This document shows, one piece after another, positions 7,563 to 31,764 of a stretch of DNA of 64,000 nucleotides. The stretch is from the IMG/VR virus record IMGVR_UViG_3300045974_000132, positions 1-64,000 of that record, one strand, 5' to 3'. Below the pieces are notes generated by a model. It was not told where the DNA came from. It saw only the letters and a program-made list of their open reading frames with translations, and ran no database searches. Both the position numbers and the translations under genes were made by a program. Position 1 is the first letter of the stretch, and the number at the start of each line of letters is the position of its first letter.

Positions 7563-10500
7563 ATGAAACACACAAATTTTGATTATGACCTTACCCGTTT
7601 CGAGGCCGACGATGAATATTCATATGTGAAGTTGGCCTACGAGAATAACGGCGATAAGAAGGTGTTGTTTGTCCTCGACGTTATGCCTACGGAGGACCTG
7701 CACAGCGGTAAGCTACTCTCCGGGCAAACTGGAGACTTGTTGAACGTTCTCGTTGCAACAACTAGGCGTCTGTACGCAAAGCAGGCGCCTAGTTTTTCTT
7801 GGCTTGCTGTTACATTCAATGCGTTTCGTACCTTTGGTAAACCGTCTGAGTATCGCGCTCAGGCTGAACAAGCTTTCTCTGAACGTGTAAAGTGCCTTAT
7901 CACTAAGTACCAACCTGACTATGTAGTTGCGTTTGGTACTTCTGTTATGCAAGCTTTGTTGGAAGACAAGATTGTAACAGACGGTAAAGGTAAGACACGC
8001 TTCAGTTATTGGCTAGGTGTTCCTGTTAAGAAGGACATCAAGTATAAGAAGAAAGTACATACCACAACTATTGTTTCCACATTAAGCCTCAATGACATTG
8101 TACGCGGTGATGACGCGGAAGTGAGCTTGCTTGGCTATATGTGCCGCAACTTGTCTGCTGTATATGGGCGACACTATTGTGTTGACGTAGATCGCTTGCA
8201 CAACCATAAGACAATTATGGTCAATACGGTTGCAAAGTTTGACAAGCTTATGGCTGTACTACGTGAGAAGCCCTATGTCTCATGGGATACGGAAGCCAAG
8301 AATCTGCATAAGGTTACGAACAGACTTCTTACTGTCCAAGCTGCTTTTGATATAGATAAAGGGTATTTGATACCTATATATCACAAAGACACACCCTTCA
8401 CACCTGATGAACTCAATTACATTGTTGAGACATTGCAGGATTACTTTGAAGGTAATAATAACAATGATTACCACATCTATGTTAATGCAAAATTTGACTT
8501 AACGTTGATGCGGGCAGAGTGCGGTATCCGTTACTTTGCAAATGATGTATGGGACATTCTTGCAGGCGAGTTCATGCTTGACGAGAACCTTAAGTCTTTG
8601 ATGACAGTGCTTGGCGAGTATTACTATTCCTTGGGTAACTTGTCAGTGCAATACGGTTTCGATGGGTATATCACTGCTGAGTTTAGTAAGCAGCATAGAG
8701 CCAACTTTGAAGCAACAGACCTAAGTGATCCCGCTGTTCAACATTATTGCACCCTCGATGTGGTGGTCCCACTTTCGATCCATTTGCAACAGAAAGAACG
8801 TGCTAAGTATATCAAGTACGCCAAGTATGAACAGGTAGTACGTAATGAGGCTAGTGATACGATCCATGCTTTCTCTAAGATGGAATATACAGGTGCCGGT
8901 CTTGACGTACCTTACTTGTTCTATTTGAAGACTGTTGACTCTCCGATTGAGTTGGAGATTAAGAAGATGGCTGGAGCCCTTCTTAAAACAGATGCTGTTA
9001 AGAAGACCAACTTGCTCTTGTGCAAAGCACAAGGTATGCCTACAGGCAGCTTATTTACAGGCGTTGAAACAGTAGCAGCTTTCAAGCTTAACAAGCCTGA
9101 CCATAAGAAGAAACTATTCTTTGAAGTGCTTGGCTTAGAGCCGCTTGAGAAGGGTGCAGGCGGCGTAGGTAAGCTTGATAAAGGATTCCAGAAAGCGTAT
9201 GCTCACATACCGGAGGTAGCACAATACACTGCACTTGAGAAGGCAAAGAAACTCAAGAATGCGTATGTTAAGAGCTTCATCAACATGCTGGGTTCGAGCG
9301 AAGACCTTCAGAAGGATCATCGCATTCGTCCAAACTATGGCTATCTAGGCGTTGTAACACATCGCGGGTCAGCAAGCGATCCTAACTTGCAACAAGTCCC
9401 AGCACACTCTGCTTTGGGTAAACATATCAAGCGGTTGTTTGTTGCGCGTGAAGGTACTCTATATATCAAGGTCGACTATCGGGTACATGAAGTACGCGGT
9501 TGGGGTCTTATATCGTTTGACAAAGCGGTTGCTGCTGTATTTGCCGCAGCTAAGAAATTGCGTGATGAATATCGTTTGCATCCAACAGCGGAACTTGCGA
9601 AACGTTTGAAGACAGAAGCTGACGTTCACATTCAGAATGCCTCCTACTTCTTCAATGTCGCAATGGAGAAGGTTGATAAGCCTCTTCGTAATGCTGTTAA
9701 GGGTATCATCTTCGGTCTGATCTACGGCATGGGTATGAAGACGCTTGCTAAGAACATCGGGCAGACTGATGACTTCACTAAGACCCTTGTAGATAACTTT
9801 GCCAAACGCTTCCCTAAAGCTATGGCTTGGACGAAAAACGTCAAGAAGTTTGCAGCGGAGAATCTATTCGTAGAAGCACCGACTGGTATTAGACGTAATC
9901 TATTTGGTTATCTACTACCTAGTAGCTTTGAGAGCGCAGGCCAAATGGCCGCTCGTATGGATCGTCAAGCAGGTAATGCTCCGATTCAAGGTATGTGTTC
10001 TAAGTTCATGATGAATGGCATTCGTATTCTTGATTGGCTGATCTTTAAGGAAATCAAGAAGAACAAGAATTTCATGCTATTCATTACCAACTCAGTGCAT
10101 GACTCGCTAGAAAACGAAGCAGGCTATGCAAACTTCCTGAAGTCTCTTGCTATGATTGAATGGGCATTGACAGACGGAGTTAAGAATAAGGTCAAGAAAC
10201 GTTATGGCTTCGACCTAGTAAGCAATCTTGAAATCGACTTTGAAATTGGGGCAACTCTTTCTCAATGTGAAGGCTGGGACTTCAGTATTGCACAGCTTGA
10301 AACACTCGTAATGGATAGCTTGATCTTCCAACGTAATAAGCTTCAGCGCAATATTGTTCCTGACCGCATCATGAAGGTGATCTTCTCTGATCGTGCTGTT
10401 ACTGAAGATGCTCCGGAATGGATGCAGAAACAGATTAGCAACTTGAACTATTCCTTCGAGTTGACAGAGCGCAGTTACATCAAGCGCATGTTAGACGAGG

Positions 10501-10682
10501 GTAAGGCCAAGATTGCAGCAGGTGAGAAAGCAATGGAAGACGTTAAGTTTGTCAAGGGTGACGAACAGAAGAAGGATGCCACTAAAGCTGCTCAAGGTAA
10601 GATTGCAGAAGGCAAAGATACTGTTGAATATGCTCGTGAGTTGATGGACTATCATAAACAATTTTTGAATAGAGGCGAATGA
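7563..10682 (+). CDS. polA: Family A DNA polymerase with N-terminal uracil-DNA-glycosylase-like domain and 3'-5' exonuclease
   Basis: ExoI SWDTEAK, ExoII YVNAKFDL, ExoIII YCTLDV; PNLQQVP, motif A KVDYRVHEVR, motif B RNAVKGIIFGLIYGM, motif C SVHDS. N-terminus KVLFVLD..P.EDLHSG.LLSGQTGDLL ... QPDYVVAFG resembles family 4 UDG. Confidence 0.93.
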   Translation: MKHTNFDYDLTRFEADDEYSYVKLAYENNGDKKVLFVLDVMPTEDLHSGKLLSGQTGDLLNVLVATTRRLYAKQAPSFSWLAVTFNAFRTFGKPSEYRAQAEQAFSERVKCLITKYQPDYVVAFGTSVMQALLEDKIVTDGKGKTRFSYWLGVPVKKDIKYKKKVHTTTIVSTLSLNDIVRGDDAEVSLLGYMCRNLSAVYGRHYCVDVDRLHNHKTIMVNTVAKFDKLMAVLREKPYVSWDTEAKNLHKVTNRLLTVQAAFDIDKGYLIPIYHKDTPFTPDELNYIVETLQDYFEGNNNNDYHIYVNAKFDLTLMRAECGIRYFANDVWDILAGEFMLDENLKSLMTVLGEYYYSLGNLSVQYGFDGYITAEFSKQHRANFEATDLSDPAVQHYCTLDVVVPLSIHLQQKERAKYIKYAKYEQVVRNEASDTIHAFSKMEYTGAGLDVPYLFYLKTVDSPIELEIKKMAGALLKTDAVKKTNLLLCKAQGMPTGSLFTGVETVAAFKLNKPDHKKKLFFEVLGLEPLEKGAGGVGKLDKGFQKAYAHIPEVAQYTALEKAKKLKNAYVKSFINMLGSSEDLQKDHRIRPNYGYLGVVTHRGSASDPNLQQVPAHSALGKHIKRLFVAREGTLYIKVDYRVHEVRGWGLISFDKAVAAVFAAAKKLRDEYRLHPTAELAKRLKTEADVHIQNASYFFNVAMEKVDKPLRNAVKGIIFGLIYGMGMKTLAKNIGQTDDFTKTLVDNFAKRFPKAMAWTKNVKKFAAENLFVEAPTGIRRNLFGYLLPSSFESAGQMAARMDRQAGNAPIQGMCSKFMMNGIRILDWLIFKEIKKNKNFMLFITNSVHDSLENEAGYANFLKSLAMIEWALTDGVKNKVKKRYGFDLVSNLEIDFEIGATLSQCEGWDFSIAQLETLVMDSLIFQRNKLQRNIVPDRIMKVIFSDRAVTEDAPEWMQKQISNLNYSFELTERSYIKRMLDEGKAKIAAGEKAMEDVKFVKGDEQKKDATKAAQGKIAEGKDTVEYARELMDYHKQFLNRGE

Positions 10683-11587
10683 TGAATCTTCAACAAGTAC
10701 CTAAAGATGATCCTACTGCTAAGAAAGCAGAAGTTTTGTTTGCAGGCAGGGTTCGCGTAAGTGAGACATTTCTATCACTTGAGGGAGAAGGGCCTTACAC
10801 TGGATACCCAACTCTTTTTATAAGATTTTTCGGCTGCAACTTTACTTGCTCAGGCTTAGGAACAAAAGAGCCTGCAACTGCTAAAGTTAATGCTTTGAAG
10901 TATGCAAGCCCTGAGACACGCGAAGACTTGTCCAAGTATCAGTTCACGACAGGTTGTGATAGCGCATACTCTTGGGATCCTGCGTTCAAGCACCTTACCG
11001 TAGATCACACTGTTGAGACATTGGCAAAAGCAATCCTTCAGCACATTGAAGGCAAGTATATGATTACTAAGCCTATTCTGTGCTTCACAGGTGGCGAGCC
11101 TATGCTGTATCAAAAATACTTTGGTGCAATATGGGAACTGGTAAAAGAGAAATTCTCGTTTATCTTGATTGAGACAAACGCTTCGATTAAAGCTACCAAC
11201 GAGCTATGGCGAGGACTAGAAGACGCAGGTAATCCAAATTTAGTTTGGAGTCTTAGTCCGAAACTTTCAAACTCTGGTGAGCCTCGTAATAAAGCAATTT
11301 CAAAAGAAGTTGTTGATTCCTACTACGGTCAGAAGTATTGGAAGTTTGTATCAGACGGTAGTGAAGAATCTTTGGTAGAGATACGTCAAGCTCTTGATAC
11401 TTACTCAGGTGGGCATACTACTTACGCCAATGAAGCATGGGCCAAAACGTGGCTGATGCCTGAAGGTGCTTCGCTAGAACAGCAAAATGAAATGCAGCGT
11501 AAGGTAGCCGCCCTATGTTTGAAGTATGGCATTAAGTTCTGTGCACGTGTCCATGTATGGATATGGAAGAATGAAATAGGTACTTGA
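10679..11587 (+). CDS. queE: 7-carboxy-7-deazaguanine synthase (radical SAM)
   Basis: VSETFLSLEGEG.YTG.PTLFIRFFGCNFTC...GCDSAYSW, FTGGEP, IETN, SLSPKL, LMPEG, RVHVWIW are QueE signatures. Confidence 0.92.
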   Translation: MMNLQQVPKDDPTAKKAEVLFAGRVRVSETFLSLEGEGPYTGYPTLFIRFFGCNFTCSGLGTKEPATAKVNALKYASPETREDLSKYQFTTGCDSAYSWDPAFKHLTVDHTVETLAKAILQHIEGKYMITKPILCFTGGEPMLYQKYFGAIWELVKEKFSFILIETNASIKATNELWRGLEDAGNPNLVWSLSPKLSNSGEPRNKAISKEVVDSYYGQKYWKFVSDGSEESLVEIRQALDTYSGGHTTYANEAWAKTWLMPEGASLEQQNEMQRKVAALCLKYGIKFCARVHVWIWKNEIGT

Positions 11588-11588
11588 T

Positions 11589-11972
11589 ATGGCTATAGCA
11601 CCTCCTCAAGGACTTATGCTATTTTCTACAGGTCAGCTAGACGGAGTCTTTTCTAGGTCGTCGGACTTGTATGAAGTAATGGAAATGCGAGCTAGTCAGC
11701 TATACACCGGTTATCTTGTTAGACTTGGTGAAGCACATAGTTTCAAAGAATTTTGGAATGCTTCATTCGATCTAACATACGCACTAAAGGAAGGATTTTC
11801 CTTTTATGTATCTCTAACAAACCTAAAACACTTAATTGAGATAGATAGCCGGATTGTAGTATGCGCTTACATATCCGACCAACAAGTTCTGTGTGCCCAC
11901 TTTGATGTTGTGCCCGAAAATGTAAAAGAACTACATTACATGCACACACCTTTCACTTATACTCGACATTAG
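11589..11972 (+). CDS. Hypothetical protein
   Basis: 127 aa ORF tightly packed between queE and the clamp gene. Confidence 0.6.
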   Translation: MAIAPPQGLMLFSTGQLDGVFSRSSDLYEVMEMRASQLYTGYLVRLGEAHSFKEFWNASFDLTYALKEGFSFYVSLTNLKHLIEIDSRIVVCAYISDQQVLCAHFDVVPENVKELHYMHTPFTYTRH

Positions 11973-11987
11973 TAGGATTAAAATATA

Positions 11988-13124
11988 ATGCTAAACTCTA
12001 AACCCTTTTCATTTATTGCTGACTGCAAGGCACTGGAGGCTACTATCAAGAAGGTAGTAGGTGTTTTAAGTTCTTCCGTAAGTCCTTCATTCTTTATTTT
12101 GGGTAGTAAGAAGAAGACAAGTGTTATCGGTATGAGTGGTGATACATTTGTTATGGCTTCTTTGGCTGATACGAAAGCAGACGCAGAAGGTGCTTTCTGT
12201 TTCGCACCTGATATTCTTACTGGCCTTATCAAGAATCGTAAGGACATGGAGTTTGCTTTTAACGGCAATGAATGCAACTTCAAACAAGTCAAAGGGCCAT
12301 ACAAGGGCCATATTGTCACGCTCCCGATTACAGGTGATCAACAAAGCACCTGTGATACCTTCTTAACAGGTAGCAAGAAGATTGATGCAACCATCCCTGC
12401 TGAAGTGCTGCTGTTATTGAAGGCAGGTTTGAATGCAACCAATGTTAAAGACGTATATCAAGGAAGTACGCTTCTTTCCTTTATCAGTCTTGACAAGAAG
12501 GGCCAGTTGTCTGTATCCTCATTCGACAGTCAGCACTTCGGTATGTTCAAGCTTGACTCTGGCGTAAAGGGTTTGCAGTTCAAAGCAGCACTGCCTGCGT
12601 CGCACTTCTCTCTTATTGACCAAGTCTCTGCTGGTGAAGATGCTAAGTTCTCTATCACTAACGGTAGCATTCGTGTAGAAGGTAAGAGCTTCATTATTGT
12701 GCTCCCTGCTACTCAAGCGGAAGAATCACACTACGAAATGGTTGAGAACTTCGTTGCGGGCTTATCAAAGCCTGTCTTCCGTTGCGGATATGATGCTGCA
12801 CAGCTTTCTACCTTAAGTGAAAACCTGTTCACTCTGTATAACGCGAATACGGCCTTTGTTCTATCTGCAAAAGATGCAGCGACCATCTTGAACATTAGCT
12901 TTACTACTCCTTCGGGTACTGCGTCTGACTCTATGAAGGTGCAACCGGCTAAGGCAAGCAAAGCGTTCAAGGCAAGTGTCGATCCTCGGTTGTTCAAGGA
13001 TATTCTATTCCTTGCTCGTACTATCAAAGAGCCTGAACTCTCTGTTACCGATAAGGTTGTTATCATGCAAGGTAGCACATCGGAAGAAGCAGCTTTGTTC
13101 TTAGCTTGTGCACGGAGCGAATAA
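11988..13124 (+). CDS. DNA polymerase sliding clamp, DnaN (beta)-like
   Basis: 378 aa, beta-clamp size, with three repeats of a beta-alpha-beta pattern (FIADCKALEATIKKV; ATIPAEVLLLLKAGL; CGYDAAQLSTLSENL; ASVDPRLFKDIL); lies two genes after polA. Confidence 0.65.
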   Translation: MLNSKPFSFIADCKALEATIKKVVGVLSSSVSPSFFILGSKKKTSVIGMSGDTFVMASLADTKADAEGAFCFAPDILTGLIKNRKDMEFAFNGNECNFKQVKGPYKGHIVTLPITGDQQSTCDTFLTGSKKIDATIPAEVLLLLKAGLNATNVKDVYQGSTLLSFISLDKKGQLSVSSFDSQHFGMFKLDSGVKGLQFKAALPASHFSLIDQVSAGEDAKFSITNGSIRVEGKSFIIVLPATQAEESHYEMVENFVAGLSKPVFRCGYDAAQLSTLSENLFTLYNANTAFVLSAKDAATILNISFTTPSGTASDSMKVQPAKASKAFKASVDPRLFKDILFLARTIKEPELSVTDKVVIMQGSTSEEAALFLACARSE

Positions 13125-13600
13125 TGGAAATTACAGAAAAGTTTGTTCTGGAGCTTGCTGTTAAAGCTTCTACAGATGCTGCCGGTAACTGCGGTGCTCC
13201 ACATCAACTTATATTTCCTATGGTGTATCTTGCACTTAAGGAAGCTTTGATCGACAATGTTGAGCTAGTACCTACTATCAGTTCTGAATCAACGGTCGGT
13301 GTACTCCCTTCTTCTGCTGAATTTACTTCTGCTTTATGTATTACCAATTCAGAAGGTAAGATTGTTGAAGTTATGCAGGACGGTACTGTCAACATCCATC
13401 AGTTAGGTAGGAATGAAGAAGCTGCTAAAATTTTCTACGAATCTCTTGCTCAGTACGGTTTTACCTTATTAGGTACTCTGAGGGAAGCTATAGCCCTTCT
13501 TAACAGAGTAGACCTTGAAGATGATGCTCAAGAGTCGGCTCTTCGTATTGACATTGAAAACTTTACGAGGCACATCCGTGGCAAGCCCTATAACATTTGA
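13124..13600 (+). CDS. Hypothetical protein
   Basis: ATG at 13124 overlaps the clamp stop (TAATG), preferred over the 13106 start. Confidence 0.6.
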   Translation: MEITEKFVLELAVKASTDAAGNCGAPHQLIFPMVYLALKEALIDNVELVPTISSESTVGVLPSSAEFTSALCITNSEGKIVEVMQDGTVNIHQLGRNEEAAKIFYESLAQYGFTLLGTLREAIALLNRVDLEDDAQESALRIDIENFTRHIRGKPYNI

Positions 13601-13991
13601 TAAGCCTTTCACGCTAACAGACTTTGTTGAACGCCAATTTCATCTGCTTGGTCCTTCTATAGGTAATAAGGGTATCGTACATACCCTTTTCTTATCAAAG
13701 CCTTTAGCTGGTGTTGAAGTAACGGCGCAAGAACCTATTCAACTGAACGGCTTCTGCAAGTATGCGTTCTTGCAAGATCCTGGTGGTATCTGCGGATTTA
13801 TTGTTATCAGCCCTACATCAAACACTCGTGTAAAGAATGTATGCGTAGTAGTCGGCTCTGAATCCGAACACTACAAGACTCTATTCCATCTACAACCTCA
13901 GGGTGTATTGATTGAGGAGTCAACAGACAGTAACACTTTGTTTGTTGCTCTAGGAGTAGAGTCCTCGTTACTTGTGAAAGTAGACCTATGA
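13578..13991 (+). CDS. Hypothetical protein
   Basis: GTG at 13578 with GAGG 7 nt upstream, in frame with the 13515 ORF; fills the gap in the operon. Confidence 0.55.
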   Translation: MASPITFDKPFTLTDFVERQFHLLGPSIGNKGIVHTLFLSKPLAGVEVTAQEPIQLNGFCKYAFLQDPGGICGFIVISPTSNTRVKNVCVVVGSESEHYKTLFHLQPQGVLIEESTDSNTLFVALGVESSLLVKVDL

Positions 13992-14218
13992 CAGTCATTG
14001 GCGATATGGAACTTGTAAAAAACGGCAATGATCGTATCGCTATTTACTTCAAGTACGACAAGGATAAGCCGAAGTGCTGGGTAGTAGATGGCCAGTACCA
14101 GTTCAACAAACAAATAGTTTTCACTGAAAAGCTTTCTCCGTTAAGGATTGATCGTGAATCAAAATCAAATACTGAAGATCAGGGCGCTGGGCACAGAGCA
14201 AGTGCGGGATGTATGTAA
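13988..14218 (+). CDS. Hypothetical protein
   Basis: 76 aa, ATGA overlap with the previous stop. Confidence 0.5.
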   Translation: MTVIGDMELVKNGNDRIAIYFKYDKDKPKCWVVDGQYQFNKQIVFTEKLSPLRIDRESKSNTEDQGAGHRASAGCM

Positions 14219-14438
14219 TATACTGGCTGAACGTATAGGTATACAAGCTTCACCAAATCCAGGTAGTTTTAACGAGTCTCTTAATGTCACCTTGAAACTG
14301 ATAAACGGTGTTACCCTTGATCTTTATTTAATAACTTCATATGAGATAGTACCCGCTGATACACCTGCTAAAATTGATTCGCATGGCAGGCTTGTTAATG
14401 CTGATATAACAATTACCTACCTTGAGGTTGTTAAATGA
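14148..14438 (+). CDS. Hypothetical protein (start uncertain)
   Basis: 96 aa ORF whose stop overlaps the next start (ATGA). Confidence 0.5.
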   Translation: MIVNQNQILKIRALGTEQVRDVCNILAERIGIQASPNPGSFNESLNVTLKLINGVTLDLYLITSYEIVPADTPAKIDSHGRLVNADITITYLEVVK

Positions 14439-14968
14439 AACGCGATTTAAGTCCTATACGCAATAAGCTACGTGAGGACAAGCGATGCCAACGCTTGTTG
14501 GGTATCTTTCAAGACTCAGGTATCTACAAGATTGCTTTCGATTCTCTCACCAAGGAAGTAATGGACATTCATAAGACTCGATCTATTCGTTTCTTATCTA
14601 GGGCGAGTGGGCGATTCATCGAACAAATTGTAGATGCTTCTCTCCGCGATCAATCAAACCGTAGTCGGTTGGCAGAAATCTCAATGAGTTGTTTTAGGGC
14701 TGCTGCTAGTTTAGAGGAAGCCCTAACGCCATTACAAGAGTATCTTATTATGACTTACGGCCCTGAAATGTCTTTTGTACGGACTAAGGATGAGCGTAAG
14801 CAGTTGGTAGAAATGGCACTACGCCCTTTCTACAAGTTCATTAGTCAATGTACTACCTTACGACAATTGACAGACATTGTAATTTTGGATATTGACAAAG
14901 CGGCCTGGGGCCTTCGTCTTTTGGTTAACGCTTATGAACTTCAAAATCGTCCGGAGCAAACAATATGA
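14435..14968 (+). CDS. Helical protein, possibly UvsY-like recombination mediator
   Basis: All-alpha amphipathic pattern; TKDERKQLVEMAL and ILDIDKAAWGLRLL loosely recall the T4 UvsY C-terminal helices; a UvsW-like helicase lies nearby. The functional call is weak. Confidence 0.4.
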   Translation: MKRDLSPIRNKLREDKRCQRLLGIFQDSGIYKIAFDSLTKEVMDIHKTRSIRFLSRASGRFIEQIVDASLRDQSNRSRLAEISMSCFRAAASLEEALTPLQEYLIMTYGPEMSFVRTKDERKQLVEMALRPFYKFISQCTTLRQLTDIVILDIDKAAWGLRLLVNAYELQNRPEQTI

Positions 14969-15897
14969 TTAGCACGTATCTGACCGCCTTTGCCTTAGCA
15001 ACAACAGTGGCCTTTATCATCGCAATGGCTGTATTCAATACACGATTCCTAAAAGCAGAACGCGAGAAGGAAGATAAATATAAGTTTCTGATCGGTAAGC
15101 TATGGAACATTGTTGATGACATTGATACTTATTCTGACGTAGCAAAGTCAGATGATATGTTATATCGGCAGTTGGTTGAAATGAAGCAACGCGAACGTTG
15201 GGAGCTAGTAGGCATTTCACTCAACAAGGATGTGCTTGAATACAACCTAGGTGCTATTCATCTTCAGTTTGAGGATAGTCCCTTGATGGGCGGTGACGGC
15301 AAGGGCTTGCTTCTTAAACAAGCTTTTAACCATATTGATGATGACGCGGACGTTTCTGAAAAAGACGTAGTTGGACTTACAACTGACGTAAGCACAGGGC
15401 TTCCGGTAGAGGGTATACATTGGGATACACAAGAAGTAGCGGATGCTTATAAATTACCTGTAGAAACGCTTATGCCAGTTGCTGTAACTGCAGGTGAAGG
15501 GCTGAAGCTCCCTGAAGCGCCGTCTATTACACTGCTTGAAATAAAGACGGATAACGCTGTTAAAGTATATGGGCCTATCACTTCTACTCAAGAAGACGGT
15601 TTCATGAAGATCGGTACTAATCTATACCTTAAGAACTCTATGCTGTATCGTAAAGAAGGTGACGAGTATATCGAGCAAAAAATGCAGGTAGTGGATGCTT
15701 CGTCTTCAGAAGAAGCTCCTCTTGCTAAGACTGCCGTTACACCTTTATACGGTACAGATATTTCTGCTAGAAAAATGTGGCTGATGCTCTCTGAAAGTCT
15801 TCTTCAGGTGTGTATTCCACCGCAAGCTACTCACCATTGCTTAATCATTCTATCTGACGGTTCTGAGTTTATCTGCCATGCCAAATCAACAAACTGA
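14965..15897 (+). CDS. Membrane-anchored hypothetical protein
   Basis: N-terminal hydrophobic helix YLTAFALATTVAFIIAMAVF followed by an acidic soluble region. Confidence 0.65.
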   Translation: MISTYLTAFALATTVAFIIAMAVFNTRFLKAEREKEDKYKFLIGKLWNIVDDIDTYSDVAKSDDMLYRQLVEMKQRERWELVGISLNKDVLEYNLGAIHLQFEDSPLMGGDGKGLLLKQAFNHIDDDADVSEKDVVGLTTDVSTGLPVEGIHWDTQEVADAYKLPVETLMPVAVTAGEGLKLPEAPSITLLEIKTDNAVKVYGPITSTQEDGFMKIGTNLYLKNSMLYRKEGDEYIEQKMQVVDASSSEEAPLAKTAVTPLYGTDISARKMWLMLSESLLQVCIPPQATHHCLIILSDGSEFICHAKSTN

Positions 15898-16297
15898 AGA
15901 AGTAACACCCGCTGCTAGTTTCCGAATTGTTCACTTTACTGTGCAGGAGTTAGGTAGTCATTCTTTAGTAGGCATCTGTAAGAGTCCTTTTCCACTTAGC
16001 TTTGGAAGTTACTTATCTTTTCTGAATCCAGATAATCGCCAATCTATTGATTTTCGTGACCGCTTAGGTGGGCCTCGCGTTGTCAATATGTGGCATGAGA
16101 ATCTAGTTCACTTATTTGACGAGCAGGGCCTTACTAAAGTTCGTGCTGTTGTATTCGGTACTGCTCCTGAGTGGTTGGCTTTCATTGAAGATGACAATGT
16201 TCCGAAAGACTATTTGAATGATTCTTTATGTATCACAGGTAGTTATGGAAAGTATTTGAAAGCAGTTGAAGCTTACTCGGGCCTACTTCTAATGTAA
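15878..16297 (+). CDS. Hypothetical protein
   Basis: 139 aa ORF overlapping the upstream stop. Confidence 0.6.
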   Translation: MPNQQTEEVTPAASFRIVHFTVQELGSHSLVGICKSPFPLSFGSYLSFLNPDNRQSIDFRDRLGGPRVVNMWHENLVHLFDEQGLTKVRAVVFGTAPEWLAFIEDDNVPKDYLNDSLCITGSYGKYLKAVEAYSGLLLM

Positions 16298-16310
16298 CTA
16301 AGGTGGTATC

Positions 16311-16538
16311 ATGTTTCAACCTCAACATAGTGTTCACCTCAATCCTCCTTTTTGTGCAAAGTGTAAAAAGCAGATAATGCAAGCTAGTATTCAGCAAGAT
16401 CCTATGAGACAAGTTGCTACCTTGCGATATGCGTGTCACGGGGTACAAGGTGAAATGACTTTCACTCAGCAGGAGCTAGTTGAACTAAGTTCTGGCAACA
16501 CCTTAATTGACTTTGTAGAATTCATCAGGCTTGGATAA
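16311..16538 (+). CDS. Small Zn-ribbon-like protein
   Basis: PFCAKCKK...YACHG; AAGGTGG RBS. Confidence 0.6.
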   Translation: MFQPQHSVHLNPPFCAKCKKQIMQASIQQDPMRQVATLRYACHGVQGEMTFTQQELVELSSGNTLIDFVEFIRLG

Positions 16539-18172
16539 TGGCGCTACTACCTAAGATATATGTTCGTGAAAAGGTATTCATACCTATCAAACATATACGC
16601 AGTAAAGAAGACCTGCAAGACGCATATACGAAACGGTTCTTTGATGATAAGGCATGTAAAGCATGTGATTATCTCAAAGACCGTTTTTGCGATATGTGCG
16701 AAGTATGCCCTGCTTACAAAGGTACTGTTAAACTTTACAGCCATAAGAACGTAAGAGGCATAAACTATATAGGTCTTCCTATAGGTGACAAGCGCAACAT
16801 TGAAAAGTATGCAGGCATTGTATTTGAAGACTTTAAGATTGTTGATAGGCGCAAAGTAGTTCCTTTCGATTACAAGATCAAGTTTCTTATTAAGCTACGC
16901 CCGCACCAACAGAAGTTGGTTGATACATTCTTCAAGAAGAAGTACGGTTTGATCGAAGCCCCTCCTCGCTTCGGTAAGACTGTGTGTATGCTGGATATTA
17001 GCATCAAGCTAGGTAACAAAACGCTGGTGCTAGCTTCCCAACATGAATTCCTTCAACAGTATATCTACCATATTGAGGGTAATGAGAAGAAGGGTATTCC
17101 TAAATGTACAAATCTGCCAGAGCTTCAACTAAAGTATAAAAAGAAGCTCTACGGTTTTCCAAAGACCGATGCTGACTTTGAAAATTTCCAAATCTTTACC
17201 ATGACGTATCACCAGTTCATGGATGAAGTATCTGGTAAGAATCGTTTCAAGAAGATTGAGCATAAGATAGGTCTTGTTGAGATTGATGAAGCGCACAAAG
17301 CAGCCGCTGCTGAGTTTAGTAAGGTTGTGTCTATGTTCCCTGCACGTTATCGTCTGGGTGTAACAGGTACTGTTGATCGTAAAGACGGTAGGCACTACGT
17401 TATAAAGAAAGTTATTGGGCCTGTTGTTGCTCGGTCAGCTGTTGAGTCAATGACACCAAAAGTATTCATCCATGAAACAGGTATTAGGATTGCACGGGTA
17501 CCTAAGCAATGGACGTTTGCAATGCTGAATCTAGCGCGTAATAAAAAGCGCAATGATCTACTTATCAAGCAAGCGGTAGCGGATGTTAAAGCAGGGCATA
17601 GCGTTGTGATACCGTTGATGTTCAAGAAGCACGTTATGGACATTGTTAATGGTATTAACGATCTGTACGGCCGACCTATTGCTGAAGCGTTCATGGGTGG
17701 GGGTGGTGATAAGAATAAGGTGCATCGTGACAACATCTTGTCAGGTGTATCTAAAGGTAAGATCAAAGTCGTTGTAGGTATTCGTTCGCTGTTGCAATTA
17801 GGCTTGAATGTACCGCGCTGGTCTATGATCTATACAGCAATGCCCATATCGAACGAACCTAACTACAAGCAAGAAACTTCGCGTGTTCGGACTCCGATGG
17901 AAGGTAAATTACAGCCTGTCATTCGTTTGTTCTATGATGAAGCCATGGGCCCCTCAGTGGGTTGTGCACGTAACTGTGTTACTCACATGCAGAAGTTTAA
18001 GTATGAGTTCTCGAAGGATCAAAAGACAAGGGAAGCTTTAGCCTACTTTGCAACTAAAGGGCGTCGTAGTAATAGTGATAATGACGATGACCAGTTTGCT
18101 CCGTCTCAAGCAAGTCACGATGAAGATGATGCCGGTAGTAACATGGGTCGCGCGAGGGCAGGAAGGCGATAA
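16538..18172 (+). CDS. SF2 DEAH helicase (UvsW/ResIII-like) with Cys-rich N-terminus
   Basis: KLRPHQ, EAPPRFGKT, EIDEAH, LGVTGTVDRKDG, LGLNVP, QETSRVRT; N-terminal CKAC...CDMCEVC. Confidence 0.9.
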   Translation: MALLPKIYVREKVFIPIKHIRSKEDLQDAYTKRFFDDKACKACDYLKDRFCDMCEVCPAYKGTVKLYSHKNVRGINYIGLPIGDKRNIEKYAGIVFEDFKIVDRRKVVPFDYKIKFLIKLRPHQQKLVDTFFKKKYGLIEAPPRFGKTVCMLDISIKLGNKTLVLASQHEFLQQYIYHIEGNEKKGIPKCTNLPELQLKYKKKLYGFPKTDADFENFQIFTMTYHQFMDEVSGKNRFKKIEHKIGLVEIDEAHKAAAAEFSKVVSMFPARYRLGVTGTVDRKDGRHYVIKKVIGPVVARSAVESMTPKVFIHETGIRIARVPKQWTFAMLNLARNKKRNDLLIKQAVADVKAGHSVVIPLMFKKHVMDIVNGINDLYGRPIAEAFMGGGGDKNKVHRDNILSGVSKGKIKVVVGIRSLLQLGLNVPRWSMIYTAMPISNEPNYKQETSRVRTPMEGKLQPVIRLFYDEAMGPSVGCARNCVTHMQKFKYEFSKDQKTREALAYFATKGRRSNSDNDDDQFAPSQASHDEDDAGSNMGRARAGRR

Positions 18173-18792
18173 TGGAAAAACTAATACTAAAACATTTGCC
18201 TAGAGAACGGGAGAAAGTTCTCACAGCAAGAGGGGTACCGCAAGCTGACTTCATTCACGGTAAGGAGCAATATGATGTTGTTCCTAATTTAGTTAAGTAT
18301 GAAGTAGAACTTGCACGTATGCCTACTAGGGCAGTAGGTACTGCAAAGCAACTGAAAGCACTAGAGTCTATCTGTACAAATCCTTTACGTTCAAGTTACG
18401 TGTTGGGTATTAGTAGCTTTCCTAGTGATGCTCTTGCAAAAGCTCTTGCAATCCATATATTCAATCAATCAATGATTTCATGGCAACGAAGGCATCGTCC
18501 AGGTAGAGTACTTCCTATTTGGCATCGTGTATTCGGAGGCTTCAATGATAATCTTCGTGACAAGCCTATTGAAGAAACACCTAGCTTGTTGGTGTTATCG
18601 AATATCAATGAAGCAAGTAGCTCCTACAAGCTTGAGAAGGTGCGAGACATATTGGAGAAGTATTCTCATATACCGCGCATTGTTGTTTTAAGCGGAGCCG
18701 ACCCTTTGACATTCTTTGCAAACAAATTGTACTGCCCTATCAATGCAGGTATATTGATTGGCCCTACAAATCGTGTTAAGGAAATGGGATGA
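18172..18792 (+). CDS. Degenerate DnaC/IstB-like AAA+ protein (possible helicase loader)
   Basis: Layout S-Y-V-L-G...ALAKALAIHI ... PSLLVLSNI.E.S..K...VRDILEKY...PRIVVLS mirrors the DnaC fold but lacks GKT and the Walker B DD. Confidence 0.5.
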   Translation: MEKLILKHLPREREKVLTARGVPQADFIHGKEQYDVVPNLVKYEVELARMPTRAVGTAKQLKALESICTNPLRSSYVLGISSFPSDALAKALAIHIFNQSMISWQRRHRPGRVLPIWHRVFGGFNDNLRDKPIEETPSLLVLSNINEASSSYKLEKVRDILEKYSHIPRIVVLSGADPLTFFANKLYCPINAGILIGPTNRVKEMG

Positions 18793-19019
18793 CAGACGTT
18801 GACAACTTTCTTAAAGACGTTGCAAAGCAAGGTAGGCTCAAGGAGTTTACGGTAGTGTGTGATGAATCCAATAACACACCTGAAGATATAGATCAACGTA
18901 GGCTTAATGTAGATGTTATTTTTTACGGTTCTTTAGCTGAACACGTTCGCAAGCGGTTGGAAGAATCTACTGATAGGACTGCATCGTATGGCTGCCATAC
19001 CACCGAAGACAAAGTATAA
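18789..19019 (+). CDS. 76 aa protein resembling an isolated tail-sheath C-terminal segment
   Basis: FLKDVAKQGRLKEFTVVCDESNNTPEDIDQRRLNVDVIF aligns ungapped (16/39 identical) with the sheath segment encoded at 26068-26184. Confidence 0.65.
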   Translation: MTDVDNFLKDVAKQGRLKEFTVVCDESNNTPEDIDQRRLNVDVIFYGSLAEHVRKRLEESTDRTASYGCHTTEDKV

Positions 19020-19494
19020 TGCTTTAGTCTTAGACTTCGACGGTGCTCTATTCCCACGAAGATTCTTTTTAACTCCGACGGGTGCTGATCCTGTATTGGT
19101 ACAAGTAATAAATACATTGTGCCAACACTATGATTTCCGAATCGTTATCTCAGCAGGCATGCAAGAACAAGGTATAGATAAGTGTAAAGAAGAGTTAAGC
19201 AAAGCAGGTATTAGTGCAGACTATGTTATGCCTAATAACTGGTCGACTCTAAGCGTAGGCTTTCATATACGCGACCGATACAAGCAGGTTGAACGCTGGT
19301 ACGATCAGTATAAAGATTCAATTGGTAGGATGTTGATCTTTGATGATGAACATTGCCCATTCCAATCGCCTATAGCTGCTTACTGGATGAGGTGTGATGA
19401 AGAACACGGATTACGCTTATTCGATCTTACTACTCTGTACGGTGAATACTCAAAATTAATGGAACATAAAGAAGACATAAATGAAAACAAGTGA
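18988..19494 (+). CDS. HAD-superfamily phosphatase (HAD_SAK-like)
   Basis: Motif I LVLDFDGAL, motif II FRIVISAG, motif IV MLIFDDE; ATAGGA RBS. Confidence 0.75.
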   Translation: MAAIPPKTKYNALVLDFDGALFPRRFFLTPTGADPVLVQVINTLCQHYDFRIVISAGMQEQGIDKCKEELSKAGISADYVMPNNWSTLSVGFHIRDRYKQVERWYDQYKDSIGRMLIFDDEHCPFQSPIAAYWMRCDEEHGLRLFDLTTLYGEYSKLMEHKEDINENK

Positions 19495-20143
19495 TATTGT
19501 AAGGCAGCGTATTCTGGAAGCTAATGCTCCTTTCTTTGCAAATGACAACATCGCAAGCTTTGTAACGCCCGAAGAGTTGGCTGGTATTCAAGAAGAAGTT
19601 GAATTTCATATGGACAATCTACTTCGAGCTTTGGTAATCGACGTTGATAACGACCATAACTCGAACGGAACTGCCAAGCGCGTAGCAAAGATGTTTGTGC
19701 GCGAGTTCTACAAAGGCCGTTACGTTGAAATGCCTAACGTTACTGTCTTTCCTAATGCTAAGAAGATTGACCAACTGTATATCGTTGGCCCTGTTAGCGT
19801 TAAGAGTACGTGCAGCCATCATCTAGTACCTATCGTAGGTAAGGTATGGGTCGGTTGCATTCCGGGCGACGATCTAAGCGGCTTATCGAAGTTTGCTCGT
19901 TTAGCTGAATGGATTTTTCGTCGTCCTCAAATTCAAGAAGAAGCTACCCAACAGTTGGCAGAACTTCTTGAAGAGATTCTCAAGCCTAAAGCTTTAGCTC
20001 TCATTGTCAAAGCACAACATATGTGTATGTGCCATCGTGGTGTAGAAGACCCGGACAGTGAGCATACAACCAGTTACATGGGTGGTGCCTTTAAGCAAGA
20101 TCCGGCACTGCGTATGGAATTCTTGACACTGATGAACAAATGA
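19481..20143 (+). CDS. folE: GTP cyclohydrolase I
   Basis: TAKRVAKMF, VKSTCSHHLVPIVG, GLSKFARL...RRPQIQEEAT, AQHMCMCHRGV (Zn ligands intact). Confidence 0.95.
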   Translation: MKTSDIVRQRILEANAPFFANDNIASFVTPEELAGIQEEVEFHMDNLLRALVIDVDNDHNSNGTAKRVAKMFVREFYKGRYVEMPNVTVFPNAKKIDQLYIVGPVSVKSTCSHHLVPIVGKVWVGCIPGDDLSGLSKFARLAEWIFRRPQIQEEATQQLAELLEEILKPKALALIVKAQHMCMCHRGVEDPDSEHTTSYMGGAFKQDPALRMEFLTLMNK

Positions 20144-21075
20144 TTAGCACACTCACACTGCCGTATTTGACTTGTATTGACCATGCTTACGTGGATGATA
20201 TTGGACGTATTCGTGGTCGTTCATACCATGCTTCCTTCACAGTATCGGGTAAGGTTGATGAAGAAGGTGAGAAGGTTGTTGTAGACTTCTCTAAGGTAAA
20301 GAAGCTCATTAAGTCGATTGTCGATGACCATGAGTACGGATTCGACCACAAGCTTTGGGTTGATTCTAATTGCAAAGAAGATGCAAACCCTAGAATTGCT
20401 ACACCCTTTGCACTTCTAAATATTCCAGAGAATGCAATACGCTCTTTCCCTAAAGCTACACATGTACATGCTTCTTCGGCGTGTTTTATCATAGCCCAGC
20501 ATGTACAGGATGTTCTGCTAAATGTTCACGGTATTGAGGTAGACATTAAGTGTGCCCTAAATACCAGCCCTCTGTTTATTCAAGCAGGTGGTGTCTACGG
20601 AATGTTTAGCTACGTTCATGGCCTGCGCGATAGTTCAGCATACGGTTGTCAGAATCTAGCACATGGACATCTTAGTTATCTGCAATTGATTCCTAAGGTG
20701 GACATTATTCGCATGGTCGTTGATCCTGTTCATTGTGCTGATGAAGATAATGCTTTAACAGCCCTTGATAAAGTATGCAATGAAATCTGCAAAGACCTGG
20801 ACGATACGATTTTCATATACGGTGCTAATGTTTGGACAGCAAGCACTGACGAGGTGTCTATTGCTTATACTTCCAAGTCACGCGGATCTATGGGCGGTAA
20901 GTTCAAGAATAACGAGCGTCAAAAGACGGTAGTTCTTGAAACAGAAACTACTGTTGAATACCTTGCAGAATATATCAATGCTAAGTATGGTGAGCTTTTA
21001 CGTGAAGCCGGCGTTGATAAGTTTATCGTAAGTGAGGGCCTTTCTAAGGGTGTTCTGTTTGAAGTAACGTCTTAA
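20140..21075 (+). CDS. queD: QueD-like 6-carboxytetrahydropterin synthase, tandem T-fold type
   Basis: IDHAY...RGRSY.ASFTVSG...VVDFSKVKK.IK...DHKL and a second half FSYVHGL....YGCQNLAHGH; translationally coupled to folE (ATGA). Confidence 0.75.
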   Translation: MISTLTLPYLTCIDHAYVDDIGRIRGRSYHASFTVSGKVDEEGEKVVVDFSKVKKLIKSIVDDHEYGFDHKLWVDSNCKEDANPRIATPFALLNIPENAIRSFPKATHVHASSACFIIAQHVQDVLLNVHGIEVDIKCALNTSPLFIQAGGVYGMFSYVHGLRDSSAYGCQNLAHGHLSYLQLIPKVDIIRMVVDPVHCADEDNALTALDKVCNEICKDLDDTIFIYGANVWTASTDEVSIAYTSKSRGSMGGKFKNNERQKTVVLETETTVEYLAEYINAKYGELLREAGVDKFIVSEGLSKGVLFEVTS

Positions 21076-31219: not shown

Positions 31220-31238
31220 CTTTGAGTAGGAGTATGTA

Positions 31239-31685: not shown

Positions 31686-31735
31686 TTGTTTAATTGTTTA
31701 ATTTGTAGTAGGTAGTGAATACGGTGTTCAAACGG

Positions 31736-31764
31736 TTGACCACCTCTGGTTATAAAGATATAAC
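31736..31764 (+). promoter_or_regulatory. Sigma70-like promoter
   Basis: TTGACC (31736-41) - 17 nt - TATAAC (31759-64) in the 129-nt intergenic gap before 31815. Confidence 0.55.

What the first reader, a model, noticed from the sequence alone, without database searches (positions are those of the whole stretch)
10679..21075. FolE + QueD-like + QueE pathway with no QueC or DpdA in the window
Established chemistry: GTP -> H2NTP (FolE) -> CPH4 (QueD) -> CDG (QueE). In phages such genes usually feed 7-deazaguanine DNA modification through a DpdA transglycosylase, which protects against restriction. Here they are embedded among replication genes, but no QueC, QueF, Gat-QueC or DpdA/TGT-like ORF is recognisable in these 64 kb. 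Either those genes lie elsewhere in the genome, or the pathway stops at CDG or a CDG derivative, or it uses an unrecognised insertase among the nearby hypothetical ORFs (11589, 13124-16538).
Basis: partly seen in the sequence, partly recalled or inferred. Interest (0 to 1): 0.7.

Follow-up and report, generated by a model that had tools for sequence, protein, structure and literature searches.

The report
Split 7-deazaguanine DNA-modification system, jumbo phage
The three genes in the window are the first half of a phage system that most likely swaps guanine in its own DNA for a 7-deazaguanine base; the "missing" inserting enzyme and a decarboxylase lie 200 kb away in the same genome, next to sugar-transferase and purine-salvage genes whose role nobody has described.

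Summary
FolE (19481-20143), a two-module QueD-like protein (20140-21075) and a phage-type QueE (10679-11587) sit in the replication module, and the window has no QueC or TGT-like gene.

The window is the first 64 kb of a complete 286,393-bp pond-metagenome jumbo phage. At 202-209 kb (minus strand) that genome carries:
- a 463-aa TGT-superfamily enzyme with the DSGGxQ motif, a second catalytic Asp and the CxCxxC...H zinc site. Its AF2 model (pLDDT 89.8) matches only TGTs. It is remotely related to validated DpdA2.
- a DpdL homologue (the proposed CDG decarboxylase).
- an XGPRT-like phosphoribosyltransferase, two glycosyltransferases and an NDP-sugar SDR.

QueC is absent genome-wide, and the same test finds it in the relatives NCTB and GR7B.

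So this is a QueC-independent, DpdL-type 7-deazaguanine system with post-replicative insertion. That kind is known (phiST dDG), but here the DpdA is unclassified.

The new point is a GT4-type glycosyltransferase fused to the module. In 160 IMG/VR loci it lies directly beside DpdL (118/118 pairs on the same strand), usually with DpdA, FolE, QueE and the PRTase, and never with QueC. PA5oct carries the same module and is reported to have modified G. The final base may therefore be more than plain dDG.

The parts
10679..11587 (+). QueE-like radical-SAM enzyme (CPH4 -> 7-carboxy-7-deazaguanine, CDG). Its start overlaps the DNA polymerase A stop by 4 nt.
   Evidence: phrog_2076, E 4.2e-50. Five NCBIfam QueE models hit, all below cut-off. 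32-36% identical to QueE-like genes of 217 phage records, including Campylobacter, Cellulophaga, Mycobacterium and Vibrio phages. Cysteine spacing C53x3C57x35C93.
19481..20143 (+). FolE, GTP cyclohydrolase I (GTP -> H2NTP)
   Evidence: PF01227, E 3.9e-46, 157 bits, full-length match.
20140..21075 (+). Bimodular QueD-like T-fold protein (H2NTP -> CPH4, inferred). It is the only PTPS-like gene in the genome.
   Evidence: PF01242 30 bits. TIGR03367 hit. Only PTPS hit in the genome. Full-length homologues in nt-1 and KVP40. Two PTPS matches per ORF in the nt-1, NCTB and GR7B homologues. CQNLAHGH motif.
18988..19494 (+). HAD-family phosphatase overlapping the FolE start by 14 nt. Possible accessory; its link to the pathway is unproven.
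   Evidence: PF18143 HAD_SAK_2, E 5.4e-9. No homologue in the 160 DpdL/GT loci.
21626..22189 (+). P-loop nucleotide-kinase-like protein two genes after QueD. Possible accessory; its link to the pathway is unproven.
   Evidence: phrog_2107 'thymidylate kinase', 1.6e-6. AAA_28 weak hit. No homologue in the 160 loci.
7563..10682 (+). Family-A DNA polymerase. This is context: it heads the operon that contains QueE.
   Evidence: PF00476, E 5.4e-46. phrog_17, 8.9e-101.
11988..13124 (+). Sliding-clamp homologue. This is context and is not part of the pathway; it rules this ORF out as an insertase.
   Evidence: tblastn to the PaBG 'DNA pol III beta' and Lu11 'sliding clamp' proteins, E 3e-32.

Best explanation
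The window holds the base-synthesis half of a split 7-deazaguanine DNA-modification system that works without QueC.

Proposed steps:
1. FolE, the bimodular QueD-like protein and QueE convert GTP to 7-carboxy-7-deazaguanine (CDG). This chemistry is established for the families. Assigning it to these divergent copies is an inference.
2. The genome has no QueC, so CDG is not turned into preQ0.
3. A DpdL homologue at 203 kb acts on CDG. The published proposal is decarboxylation to 7-deazaguanine. That activity has not been shown biochemically anywhere.
4. A 463-aa TGT-superfamily enzyme at 207 kb (DpdA-like) exchanges guanine in replicated phage DNA for the deazaguanine base. This is inferred from fold, catalytic motifs and remote homology to validated DpdA2.
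5. An XGPRT-like phosphoribosyltransferase in the same island most likely converts the released guanine to GMP. That would remove a competing substrate and refill the GTP pool that feeds FolE (inference).
6. A GT4-type glycosyltransferase is tied to DpdL and DpdA in many viruses. In this phage a GT2-like transferase and an NDP-sugar dehydratase/epimerase-type SDR join it. They either decorate the inserted base or act at a step not yet understood.

The expected result is restriction-resistant phage DNA.
For: Base synthesis genes.

QueC absence:
- The genome is complete: direct terminal repeats, CheckV 100%.
- QueC is absent, while the same test finds it in NCTB and GR7B.

DpdL:
- phmmer to phiST DpdL, 1.7e-12.
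- phrog_17812, 1.3e-25.
- Family HMM, 2.5e-46.
- It keeps all residues invariant across its family: H22, H38, R39, H40, E58, the S79-C80-E81 motif and E106.

DpdA-like enzyme:
- 34% identical (E 2e-73) to the NCTB ORF that passes the Pfam TGT cut-off.
- Seven of 78 family members carry PF01702.
- Invariant D123-S-G-G-x-Q128, D280 and C324xC326xxC329...H352.
- The family profile hits archaeosine TGT 1iq8, E 1.3e-7.
- AF2 model pLDDT 89.8. All 50 matches listed by Foldseek are TGTs, probability 1.0.
- hhalign gives 96% to nt-1 DpdA2, the validated YP_008125322 (PMC6884629).

Module conservation:
- 74 of 80 DpdL-seeded loci hold a DpdA-like ORF.
- 66 of 80 GT-seeded loci hold DpdL.
- The PRTase is present in 27 and 46 of the two sets.
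- QueC is in none.

Experimental anchors:
- phiST (QueD, QueE, FolE, DpdL, DpdA3) has all its G replaced by dDG (PMC10516641).
- PA5oct carries DpdA-like gp168, GT-B gp167, DpdL gp166, PRTase gp163 and QueE gp162. Its virion DNA resists G-containing restriction sites and is attacked by nucleases that sense modified DNA (PMC12191111).
Against: - No chemistry exists for this uncultured phage.
- DpdL decarboxylase activity has never been demonstrated. Co-expressing dpdL with dpdA from phiST or ACP17 in E. coli gave no dDG (PMC10516641).
- Sequence cannot show whether the TGT-like enzyme acts on DNA rather than tRNA.
- The QueD-like and QueE proteins are divergent and fall below curated equivalog cut-offs.
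- The QueD N-terminal module lacks the canonical CxxxHGH motif.
- The tight GT-B link is not explained by a plain dDG end product.
- A PRTase and kinase-like genes are also what a nucleotide-level route would need.
Confidence: 0.7

Rival explanations
1. Pre-replicative route. The XGPRT-like phosphoribosyltransferase couples 7-deazaguanine (or CDG) to PRPP, as the PRTases of the tubercidin and toyocamycin pathways do. Kinases and ribonucleotide reductase then produce 7-deaza-dGTP, and the family-A polymerase encoded next to QueE incorporates it. The TGT-like enzyme would be secondary.
For: - A 6-oxopurine-type PRTase lies in the island.
- It belongs to a family found in 27/80 and 46/80 DpdL/GT loci. 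It is embedded between QueE and QueD in BUCT-ZZ01 and present in PA5oct.
- A kinase-like gene follows QueD.
- QueE overlaps the polymerase gene.
- From general knowledge, 7-deaza-dGTP is a good polymerase substrate.
Against: - A DpdA-like transglycosylase accompanies DpdL in 74/80 loci, while the PRTase is present in only a third to a half.
- No convincing dGTP-clearing enzyme was found, only a sub-threshold MazG-like hit and an HD protein at 226-230 kb.
- The restriction pattern reported for PA5oct suggests motif-limited modification (GA/GG), which is typical of transglycosylases (PMC12191111).
- Cui et al. conclude that all known cases are post-replicative (PMC10516641).
Confidence: 0.12
2. 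The inserted base is not plain 7-deazaguanine but a sugar-bearing derivative. DpdA, DpdL and the GT4-type transferase would build a glycosylated 7-deazaguanine in DNA, helped here by a GT2-like transferase and an NDP-sugar SDR. This refines the best explanation rather than excluding it.
For: - GT-B lies beside DpdL in 118/118 co-occurring pairs on the same strand, with a median gap of 242 bp.
- 66 of 80 GT-seeded loci hold DpdL. Most of the rest are cut at the contig end, or have GT-B directly upstream of a DpdA-like gene.
- GT-B, DpdL and DpdA form an overlapping trio in Magnetospirillum contigs.
- The family keeps an EX7E-type motif and has a GT4 fold.
- The island also holds a GT-A protein and a dTDP-glucose-dehydratase-like SDR, and these are conserved in a relative.
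- The E. coli dpdA + dpdL experiments lacking these genes failed (PMC10516641).
Against: - 7-deazaguanine has no obvious hydroxyl acceptor.
- phiST-type clusters make dDG with no GT.
- No mass-spectrometry evidence exists.
- The GTs could instead glycosylate a protein or a small molecule.
- The GT-B/DpdL complex prediction gave no answer.
Confidence: 0.3
3. Auxiliary metabolism rather than DNA modification. The genes would boost host queuosine or archaeosine-type tRNA modification, or make a pterin or pterin glycoside (FolE + PTPS-like + SDR + GT, as in cyanobacterial biopterin glucoside).
For: - The family profile's best solved relative is a tRNA enzyme.
- UDP-glucose:tetrahydrobiopterin glucosyltransferase appears among the structural matches of GT-B, at rank 23.
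- Hutinet 2019 raised tRNA-Q boosting for phages without DpdA (PMC6884629).
Against: - QueE, which commits to 7-deazapurines, co-occurs in 50/80 GT loci, and a DpdA-like gene in 60-74/80.
- There is no QueC or QueF, so neither preQ0 nor preQ1 for tRNA can be made.
- The SDR is of the extended NDP-sugar type, not a sepiapterin reductase, and is present in few loci.
- DpdL-containing phiST and PA5oct have modified DNA (PMC10516641, PMC12191111).
Confidence: 0.05

Closest known systems
Cellulophaga phage phiST dDG system (QueD, QueE, FolE, DpdL, DpdA3; Cui, Hutinet et al. 2023, PMC10516641)
   Same: FolE, QueD and QueE are present, QueC is absent, and a DpdL homologue (32% identity) and a TGT-superfamily insertase are present. 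The genes lie beside the replication genes.
   Different: - The insertase is not DpdA3: hhalign 1.5%, and neither the DpdA3 HMM nor the PHROG models hit.
- phiST has MazG and an ATPase but no glycosyltransferase, SDR or PRTase.
- Here the system is split into two loci about 185 kb apart.
Vibrio phage nt-1 / VH7D DpdA2 systems (Hutinet 2019, PMC6884629; Cui 2023)
   Same: They share the same unusual ~310-aa bimodular QueD (31% identity). DpdA2 is the closest experimentally validated relative of the 463-aa enzyme (hhalign 96%).
   Different: - nt-1 has QueC and ArcS and makes dPreQ0/dG+. This phage has neither.
- The similarity to DpdA2 is visible only at profile level, with no BLAST hit.
- nt-1 has no DpdL or GT-B.
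Pseudomonas jumbo phage PA5oct (Wroclawvirus)
   Same: It has the same module: DpdA-like gp168, GT-B gp167, DpdL gp166, PRTase gp163 and QueE gp162, beside the DNA polymerase. Genome size is similar. Modified G in virion DNA is reported experimentally (PMC12191111).
   Different: - It is a different phage lineage, and its genes form one locus.
- No GT-A or SDR was seen in that locus.
- The chemical identity of its modification is still unknown.
Phage NCTB and Vibrio phages GR7B/GR11A (nearest sequenced relatives of the replication module)
   Same: The PolA-QueE junction is syntenic, and the helicase and FolE are also conserved. They carry the same DpdA family (30-34% identity), followed by the same 179-aa gene and sigma factor.
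   Different: They carry QueC and no detectable DpdL, GT-B or PRTase. In this phage a six-gene island (GT-A, PRTase, 137-aa ORF, GT-B, SDR, DpdL) sits between DpdA and the 179-aa gene, and QueC is gone.
Bacterial/archaeal tRNA-guanine transglycosylases (TGT, ArcTGT)
   Same: TIM-barrel fold, the DSGGxQ catalytic motif, a second catalytic Asp and the CxCxxC...H zinc site.
   Different: - About 15% identity.
- The protein itself does not reach the Pfam or NCBIfam thresholds.
- It has extra N-terminal strands and a C-terminal helical extension.
- Its genomic context is that of a DNA-modification system.

Membership tests
Phage 7-deazaguanine DNA-modification systems (Hutinet 2019 / Cui 2023) | Genes for CDG synthesis: FolE, QueD, QueE | tested here: met
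   FolE is strong. QueE is supported by PHROG and many phage homologues. QueD is bimodular and is the type found in nt-1. QueD and QueE fall below curated equivalog cut-offs.
Phage 7-deazaguanine DNA-modification systems (Hutinet 2019 / Cui 2023) | A DpdA-type transglycosylase of the TGT superfamily encoded by the virus | tested here: met
   The 463-aa ORF at genome 207354-208745. The evidence is family homology to ORFs that pass Pfam TGT, conserved catalytic and zinc motifs, a profile hit to 1iq8, and an AF2 model whose listed Foldseek matches are all TGTs.
Phage 7-deazaguanine DNA-modification systems (Hutinet 2019 / Cui 2023) | A 7-deazaguanine derivative is present in virion DNA | not testable with these tools
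   The phage is uncultured. The two public runs that hold the sequence are pond metagenomes kept as contigs only.
preQ0 / ADG / G+ / preQ1 subtypes | QueC (or Gat-QueC) converting CDG to preQ0 | tested here: not met
   PF06508 finds nothing in the complete genome. phmmer with nt-1 QueC finds nothing. The same Pfam search finds QueC in NCTB and GR7B.
dDG subtype (DpdL-dependent) | A DpdL homologue (T-fold, HxH... SCE motif) together with FolE, QueD, QueE and DpdA, without QueC | tested here: met
   DpdL biochemistry itself is unproven (PMC10516641).
DpdA2 subfamily | Sequence-level (BLAST/PSI-BLAST) membership with nt-1 DpdA2 | tested here: inconclusive
   There is no BLAST or tblastn hit. A small DpdA2 HMM gives E 0.06. 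hhalign of the family profile gives 96%, E 3.6e-9, over 191 columns. It is best treated as a sister or unclassified subfamily.
DpdA3 subfamily | Homology to phiST CGPG_00065 (~260 aa) | tested here: not met
   phmmer, phrog_20335, phrog_19058 and a 25-sequence DpdA3 HMM find nothing. hhalign gives 1.5%.
Nucleotide-level base replacement (Z-genome-like logic; tubercidin-type PRTase step) | A PRTase acting on the modified base, a dGTP-specific hydrolase, and a polymerase taking the modified dNTP | tested here: inconclusive
   A PRTase is present, but its specificity is unknown. Only a sub-threshold MazG-like hit and an HD protein were found. Polymerase selectivity cannot be tested.

The most novel reading that the evidence does not exclude
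Many aquatic, soil and jumbo phages share a module not previously described: DpdA-like + DpdL + a dedicated GT4 glycosyltransferase + an XGPRT-like PRTase, with FolE, QueD and QueE and never QueC. There are at least ~590 IMG/VR loci each for DpdL and GT-B, and the phages include PA5oct, ACP17 and BUCT-ZZ01. On this reading the module makes a sugar-decorated 7-deazaguanine in DNA, a class of purine hypermodification not yet reported. The PRTase would close a guanine -> GMP -> GTP -> deazaguanine recycling loop.
Probability: 0.3. Interest if true: 0.85.

Novelty: new variant of a known kind. Interest (0 to 1): 0.55.

Why it matters
The apparent puzzle of a deazaguanine pathway with no insertase disappears once the whole genome is read. 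This supports the published view that phages encoding 7-deazaguanine synthesis also encode a transglycosylase. It also shows that Pfam-level screens miss such enzymes.

More usefully, the case exposes a large, coherent gene module that is experimentally untouched. In it, DpdL is almost always partnered with a specific glycosyltransferase and often with a purine phosphoribosyltransferase. That may explain why DpdL + DpdA alone failed in E. coli. It points to PA5oct, ACP17 and BUCT-ZZ01 as culturable test cases, and it may lead to a new purine hypermodification relevant to restriction evasion and to modification-sensing defence nucleases.

Tried and rejected
- Pfam TGT and QueC scans of the genome. 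The TGT negative turned out to be uninformative, because the same scan misses validated nt-1 DpdA2 and phiST DpdA3. The QueC negative is meaningful, because it has positive controls.
- DpdA3 searched by phmmer, PHROG models and my own HMM: absent.
ORF 11988-13124 is a sliding clamp. ORF 14435-14968 is a conserved unknown shared with NCTB. None has a homologue in the 160 DpdL/GT loci or any TGT signal. They were rejected as insertase candidates, but their structures were not predicted.
- I first took the GT-B 397-aa protein for a possible TGT because of its size. It is a GT4 glycosyltransferase.
- NCTB's 306-aa gene after FolE looked like a syntenic QueD. It is not homologous; NCTB's QueD lies elsewhere.
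- Complex prediction for GT-B + DpdL gave no answer, so it counts neither way.
- Public reads: only two pond-metagenome runs, kept as contigs, so no modification signal could be read and read laying was not used.
- Supplementary tables of Cui 2023 are not held.
I re-ran it without those rows.
- The 137-aa and 179-aa island ORFs remain uncharacterised.

Full report
**What the window is.** The window is bases 1-64000 of a single 286,393-bp virus record. The record has direct terminal repeats and a CheckV completeness of 100%. The only public runs that hold it are pond metagenomes. GC content is about 42-43%. The region in question is one tightly packed plus-strand replication operon, in which most genes overlap or abut.

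**The observation.** It is confirmed.
- FolE (19481-20143) is unambiguous: PF01227, E 3.9e-46.
- The next gene (20140-21075, 311 aa) overlaps FolE by 4 nt. It matches PTPS/QueD only in residues 22-73. Over its full length it is about 31% identical to the ~300-aa 'PTPS-like' proteins of KVP40, nt-1, VH7D and phi-Grn1.
- In nt-1, NCTB and GR7B those homologous ORFs give two PTPS matches each, so this is a bimodular T-fold QueD. Our copy has a CQNLAHGH motif at residue 170. It is the only PTPS-like gene in the genome.
- The QueE-like gene (10679-11587) overlaps the stop of the family-A DNA polymerase by 4 nt. It matches phrog_2076 'QueE-like radical SAM' at 4.2e-50 and five NCBIfam QueE models below their cut-offs.
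- It has homologues in 217 phage records. These include Campylobacter, Cellulophaga, Mycobacterium and Vibrio phages, groups with proven 7-deazaguanine DNA (PMC6884629, PMC10516641).
- Nothing in the window resembles QueC or TGT.

**The nearby hypothetical ORFs.**
- ORF 11988-13124 is a sliding-clamp homologue of PaBG and Lu11.
- ORF 16538-18172 is a helicase, and 18172-18792 matches a PHROG annotated as a DNA-polymerase family.
- ORF 14435-14968, the helicase and 18172-18792 are shared with NCTB and GR7B.
- The remaining small ORFs have no family.
- None of them has a homologue in 160 deazaguanine loci from other viruses, and none matches the DpdA-family profile. I therefore reject the idea of a hidden insertase here.

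**Where the missing parts are.**
- phmmer with the phiST proteins found a clear DpdL homologue at genome 202967-203329, minus strand, E 1.7e-12. The phiST coordinates came from KC821604 and the protein roles from PMC10516641. phrog_17812 and a 136-sequence HMM (2.5e-46) confirm the hit.
- Pfam TGT found nothing in this genome. It did hit a 531-aa ORF in the syntenic phage NCTB (31 bits, above cut-off) and a 563-aa ORF in GR7B.
- Those ORFs are 34% and 30% identical (E 2e-73 and 6e-65) to a 463-aa ORF at genome 207354-208745, minus strand.

**Evidence that the 463-aa protein is a transglycosylase.**
- Its family has 78 members in the large protein database, seven with precomputed PF01702.
- The family has invariant D123-S-G-G-x-Q128, D280 and C324-x-C326-x-x-C329...H352. 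These are the TGT catalytic and zinc signatures.
- The family profile hits archaeosine TGT 1iq8 at 1.3e-7, on exactly those motifs.
- The AF2 model (pLDDT 89.8, pTM 0.89) has only TGT structures among its 50 listed Foldseek matches, each at probability 1.0.
- hhalign links the family to nt-1 ORF390 (96%), ACP17 gp123 (94.6%) and BUCT-ZZ01's 416-aa protein (93.8%), but not to phiST DpdA3 (1.5%).
- nt-1 ORF390 is YP_008125322, the experimentally validated DpdA2 (PMC6884629).
- As a control, the Pfam TGT scan also misses nt-1 DpdA2 and phiST DpdA3. Its negative result on this genome therefore meant nothing.

**QueC.** It is absent. PF06508 and nt-1 QueC find nothing, while the same Pfam search finds QueC in NCTB and GR7B. 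QueC was found in none of the 160 DpdL/GT loci, and the three DpdL-carrying phages scanned (ACP17, BUCT-ZZ01, Ahp1) lack it. This lineage appears to have exchanged a QueC-type (preQ0) chemistry for a DpdL-type one.

**The island.** On the minus strand, in transcription order and in genome coordinates:

| Gene | Coordinates |
|---|---|
| DpdA-like | 207354-208745 |
| GT2-like glycosyltransferase, 282 aa | 206509-207357 |
| Phosphoribosyltransferase, 156 aa | 206042-206512 |
| Unknown, 137 aa | 205642-206055 |
| GT4-type glycosyltransferase, 397 aa | 204270-205463 |
| Extended SDR | 203317-204270 |
| DpdL | 202967-203329 |
| Unknown, 179 aa | 202378-202917 |
| Sigma factor | 201208-202320 |
| SSB | follows the sigma factor |

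- The PRTase matches PF00156 at 2.7e-8. Its nearest relatives are xanthine/guanine and archaeal purine PRTases.
- The GT4-type protein has an AF2 model at pLDDT 92.7 and resembles BshA, MshA and glycogen synthase.
- The SDR matches PF01370 at 1.6e-52, and its best NCBIfam model is dTDP-glucose 4,6-dehydratase.
- In NCTB and GR7B the DpdA gene is followed directly by the 179-aa homologue (GR7B also shows the sigma-factor homologue next). The six genes in between are therefore an insertion in this lineage.
- A metagenomic relative with 65% identical DpdA carries DpdA, DpdL, GT-B, SDR, GT-A, PRTase and the 137-aa homologue in a different order.

**How general the module is.** I seeded IMG/VR with DpdL (at least 595 loci, best 80 kept) and with the GT-B family (at least 586 loci, best 80 kept). 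I then scored the flanks with HMMs built from the loci.

| Feature | DpdL-seeded (of 80) | GT-B-seeded (of 80) |
|---|---|---|
| Any DpdA-like | 74 (51 of this family, 22 DpdA3) | 60 |
| DpdL | 80 | 66 |
| GT-B | 52 | 80 |
| FolE | 50 | 56 |
| QueE | 29 | 50 |
| PRTase | 27 | 46 |
| ACP17-gp122-like small ORF | 37 | 57 |
| QueD | 25 | 3 |
| QueC | 0 | 0 |

- Most GT-B-seeded loci without DpdL are cut at the contig end. About five show a third layout: QueD, QueE, FolE and PRTase, then GT-B followed directly by a ~400-aa DpdA-like gene.
- All 118 DpdL/GT-B pairs lie on the same strand, with a median gap of 242 bp.
- Two main architectures emerge. One is compact and phiST-like: QueE, QueD, PRTase, FolE, DpdL, DpdA3, with no GT. 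The other is a GT type: DpdA (~500 aa), gp122-like, DpdL, GT-B, FolE/PRTase/QueE. Our phage belongs to the GT type.
- Our PRTase scores 3.8e-25 against the HMM of the PRTases in those loci.
- Across one genome for each of 185,579 prokaryotic species, DpdL is rare. Only 34 loci were found, mostly MAG contigs with the same viral module, plus Magnetospirillum loci with an overlapping GT-B, DpdL, DpdA, QueD set.
- Cultured carriers of the GT type include ACP17 (gp123 DpdA2-like, gp124 GT-B, gp125 DpdL), BUCT-ZZ01 and PA5oct.

**Experimental anchors from the literature.**
- phiST, phi19:2 and phi13:1 replace G by dDG, and DpdL was proposed as the CDG decarboxylase. However, dpdL + dpdA from phiST or ACP17 gave no dDG in E. 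coli, and the authors suggested further enzymes may be needed (PMC10516641).
- PA5oct virion DNA resists several G-containing restriction enzymes, which suggests modified G in GA/GG contexts. It is also restricted by END nucleases that sense modified DNA (PMC12191111).
- I found no paper in the searchable library that links DpdL with a glycosyltransferase or a PRTase.

**Mechanism, and what is shown versus inferred.**
- Shown by sequence and structure: the gene set, the TGT fold and motifs, the absence of QueC, and the conserved module.
- Inferred: GTP -> H2NTP -> CPH4 -> CDG through FolE, QueD and QueE; CDG processing by DpdL; post-replicative guanine exchange by the DpdA-like enzyme.
- My reading of the PRTase is guanine salvage. 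Each exchange releases free guanine, which competes for the TGT base pocket. Converting it to GMP with PRPP removes it and refills the GTP pool that FolE consumes.
- The alternative is that the PRTase makes a deaza-nucleotide for the polymerase. This cannot be excluded. It is less likely because DpdA is nearly universal in these loci while the PRTase is not.
- The dedicated GT-B, and here also the GT-A and a sugar-nucleotide SDR, are not explained by a plain dDG product. They are the most interesting loose end.

**Verdict.** The finding is real but largely explained. It is one half of a split, QueC-independent, DpdL-type 7-deazaguanine DNA-modification system whose transglycosylase lies elsewhere in the genome. 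It is a new variant of a known kind, because the DpdA subfamily is unclassified and the QueD is bimodular. The conserved glycosyltransferase/PRTase partnership, not described in the papers I could search, deserves experimental follow-up in PA5oct, ACP17 or BUCT-ZZ01.

Noticed in passing
window 28334-33986 (also 26611-28320): The jump in GC content (0.53 against 0.42) and the strongly negative AT skew at 28-34 kb come from collagen-like (Gly-X-Y) tail-fibre genes: a 961-aa ORF with dozens of tail-fibre PHROG hits and a 723-aa ORF. It is not a foreign island.
   Followed up: partly
window 24580-26274 and 35996-37156: Two separate tail-sheath genes (phrog_23 and phrog_12249) flank the fibre genes, about 10 kb apart.
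   Followed up: no
genome 202378-208745 (outside the window; L004:9379-15746): A six-gene island (GT2-like, XGPRT-like PRTase, 137-aa ORF, GT4-like, NDP-sugar SDR, DpdL) is inserted between DpdA and a 179-aa gene. Those two genes are adjacent in NCTB and GR7B.
   Followed up: yes
L002, L217 (NCTB) and L001, L216, L218 (GR7B): The nearest sequenced relatives carry QueC (GR7B has two copies) and lack DpdL, GT-B and the PRTase. In every genome and locus examined, QueC and DpdL were never found together.
   Followed up: partly
L096, L100, L103, L138 (IMG/VR): A third architecture without DpdL: QueD, QueE, FolE and PRTase, then GT-B directly followed by a ~400-aa DpdA-like gene. The glycosyltransferase is therefore tied to the transglycosylase as well as to DpdL.
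   Followed up: partly
L008:9236-10387 (Vibrio phage Bakedbeans gp176): DpdL is fused to the C-terminus of an unknown ~255-aa domain. That domain matched neither the DpdA family profile nor Pfam.
   Followed up: partly
L014-L174 and L007:7138-7536: A small ORF related to ACP17 gp122 (~130-180 aa, no family) lies just upstream of DpdL in 37/80 and 57/80 loci. This phage has no detectable copy.
   Followed up: partly
genome 226012-229886 (L215:13-3887): A run of nucleotide hydrolase-like genes: an HD-domain protein, a metallo-beta-lactamase with a weak Apyc1 (anti-Pycsar) hit, a DHH/DHHA1-like protein and a sub-threshold MazG-like protein. They might clear dGTP or degrade defence signalling nucleotides.
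   Followed up: no
genome 211219-211908 (L004:18220-18909): A dCTP-deaminase/dUTPase-fold gene (PF22769, E 2.3e-31) lies about 2.5 kb upstream of DpdA on the opposite strand, beyond a PD-(D/E)XK nuclease gene and beside a Toprim primase-like gene and a small ORF.
   Followed up: no
genome 193898-197689 (L004:899-4690): A MoxR-type AAA+ ATPase and a vWA-domain protein form a pair next to a RecA-like gene.
   Followed up: no
L012:16336-18282: In a relative's island the gene after the PRTase region carries an intein with a LAGLIDADG domain.
   Followed up: no
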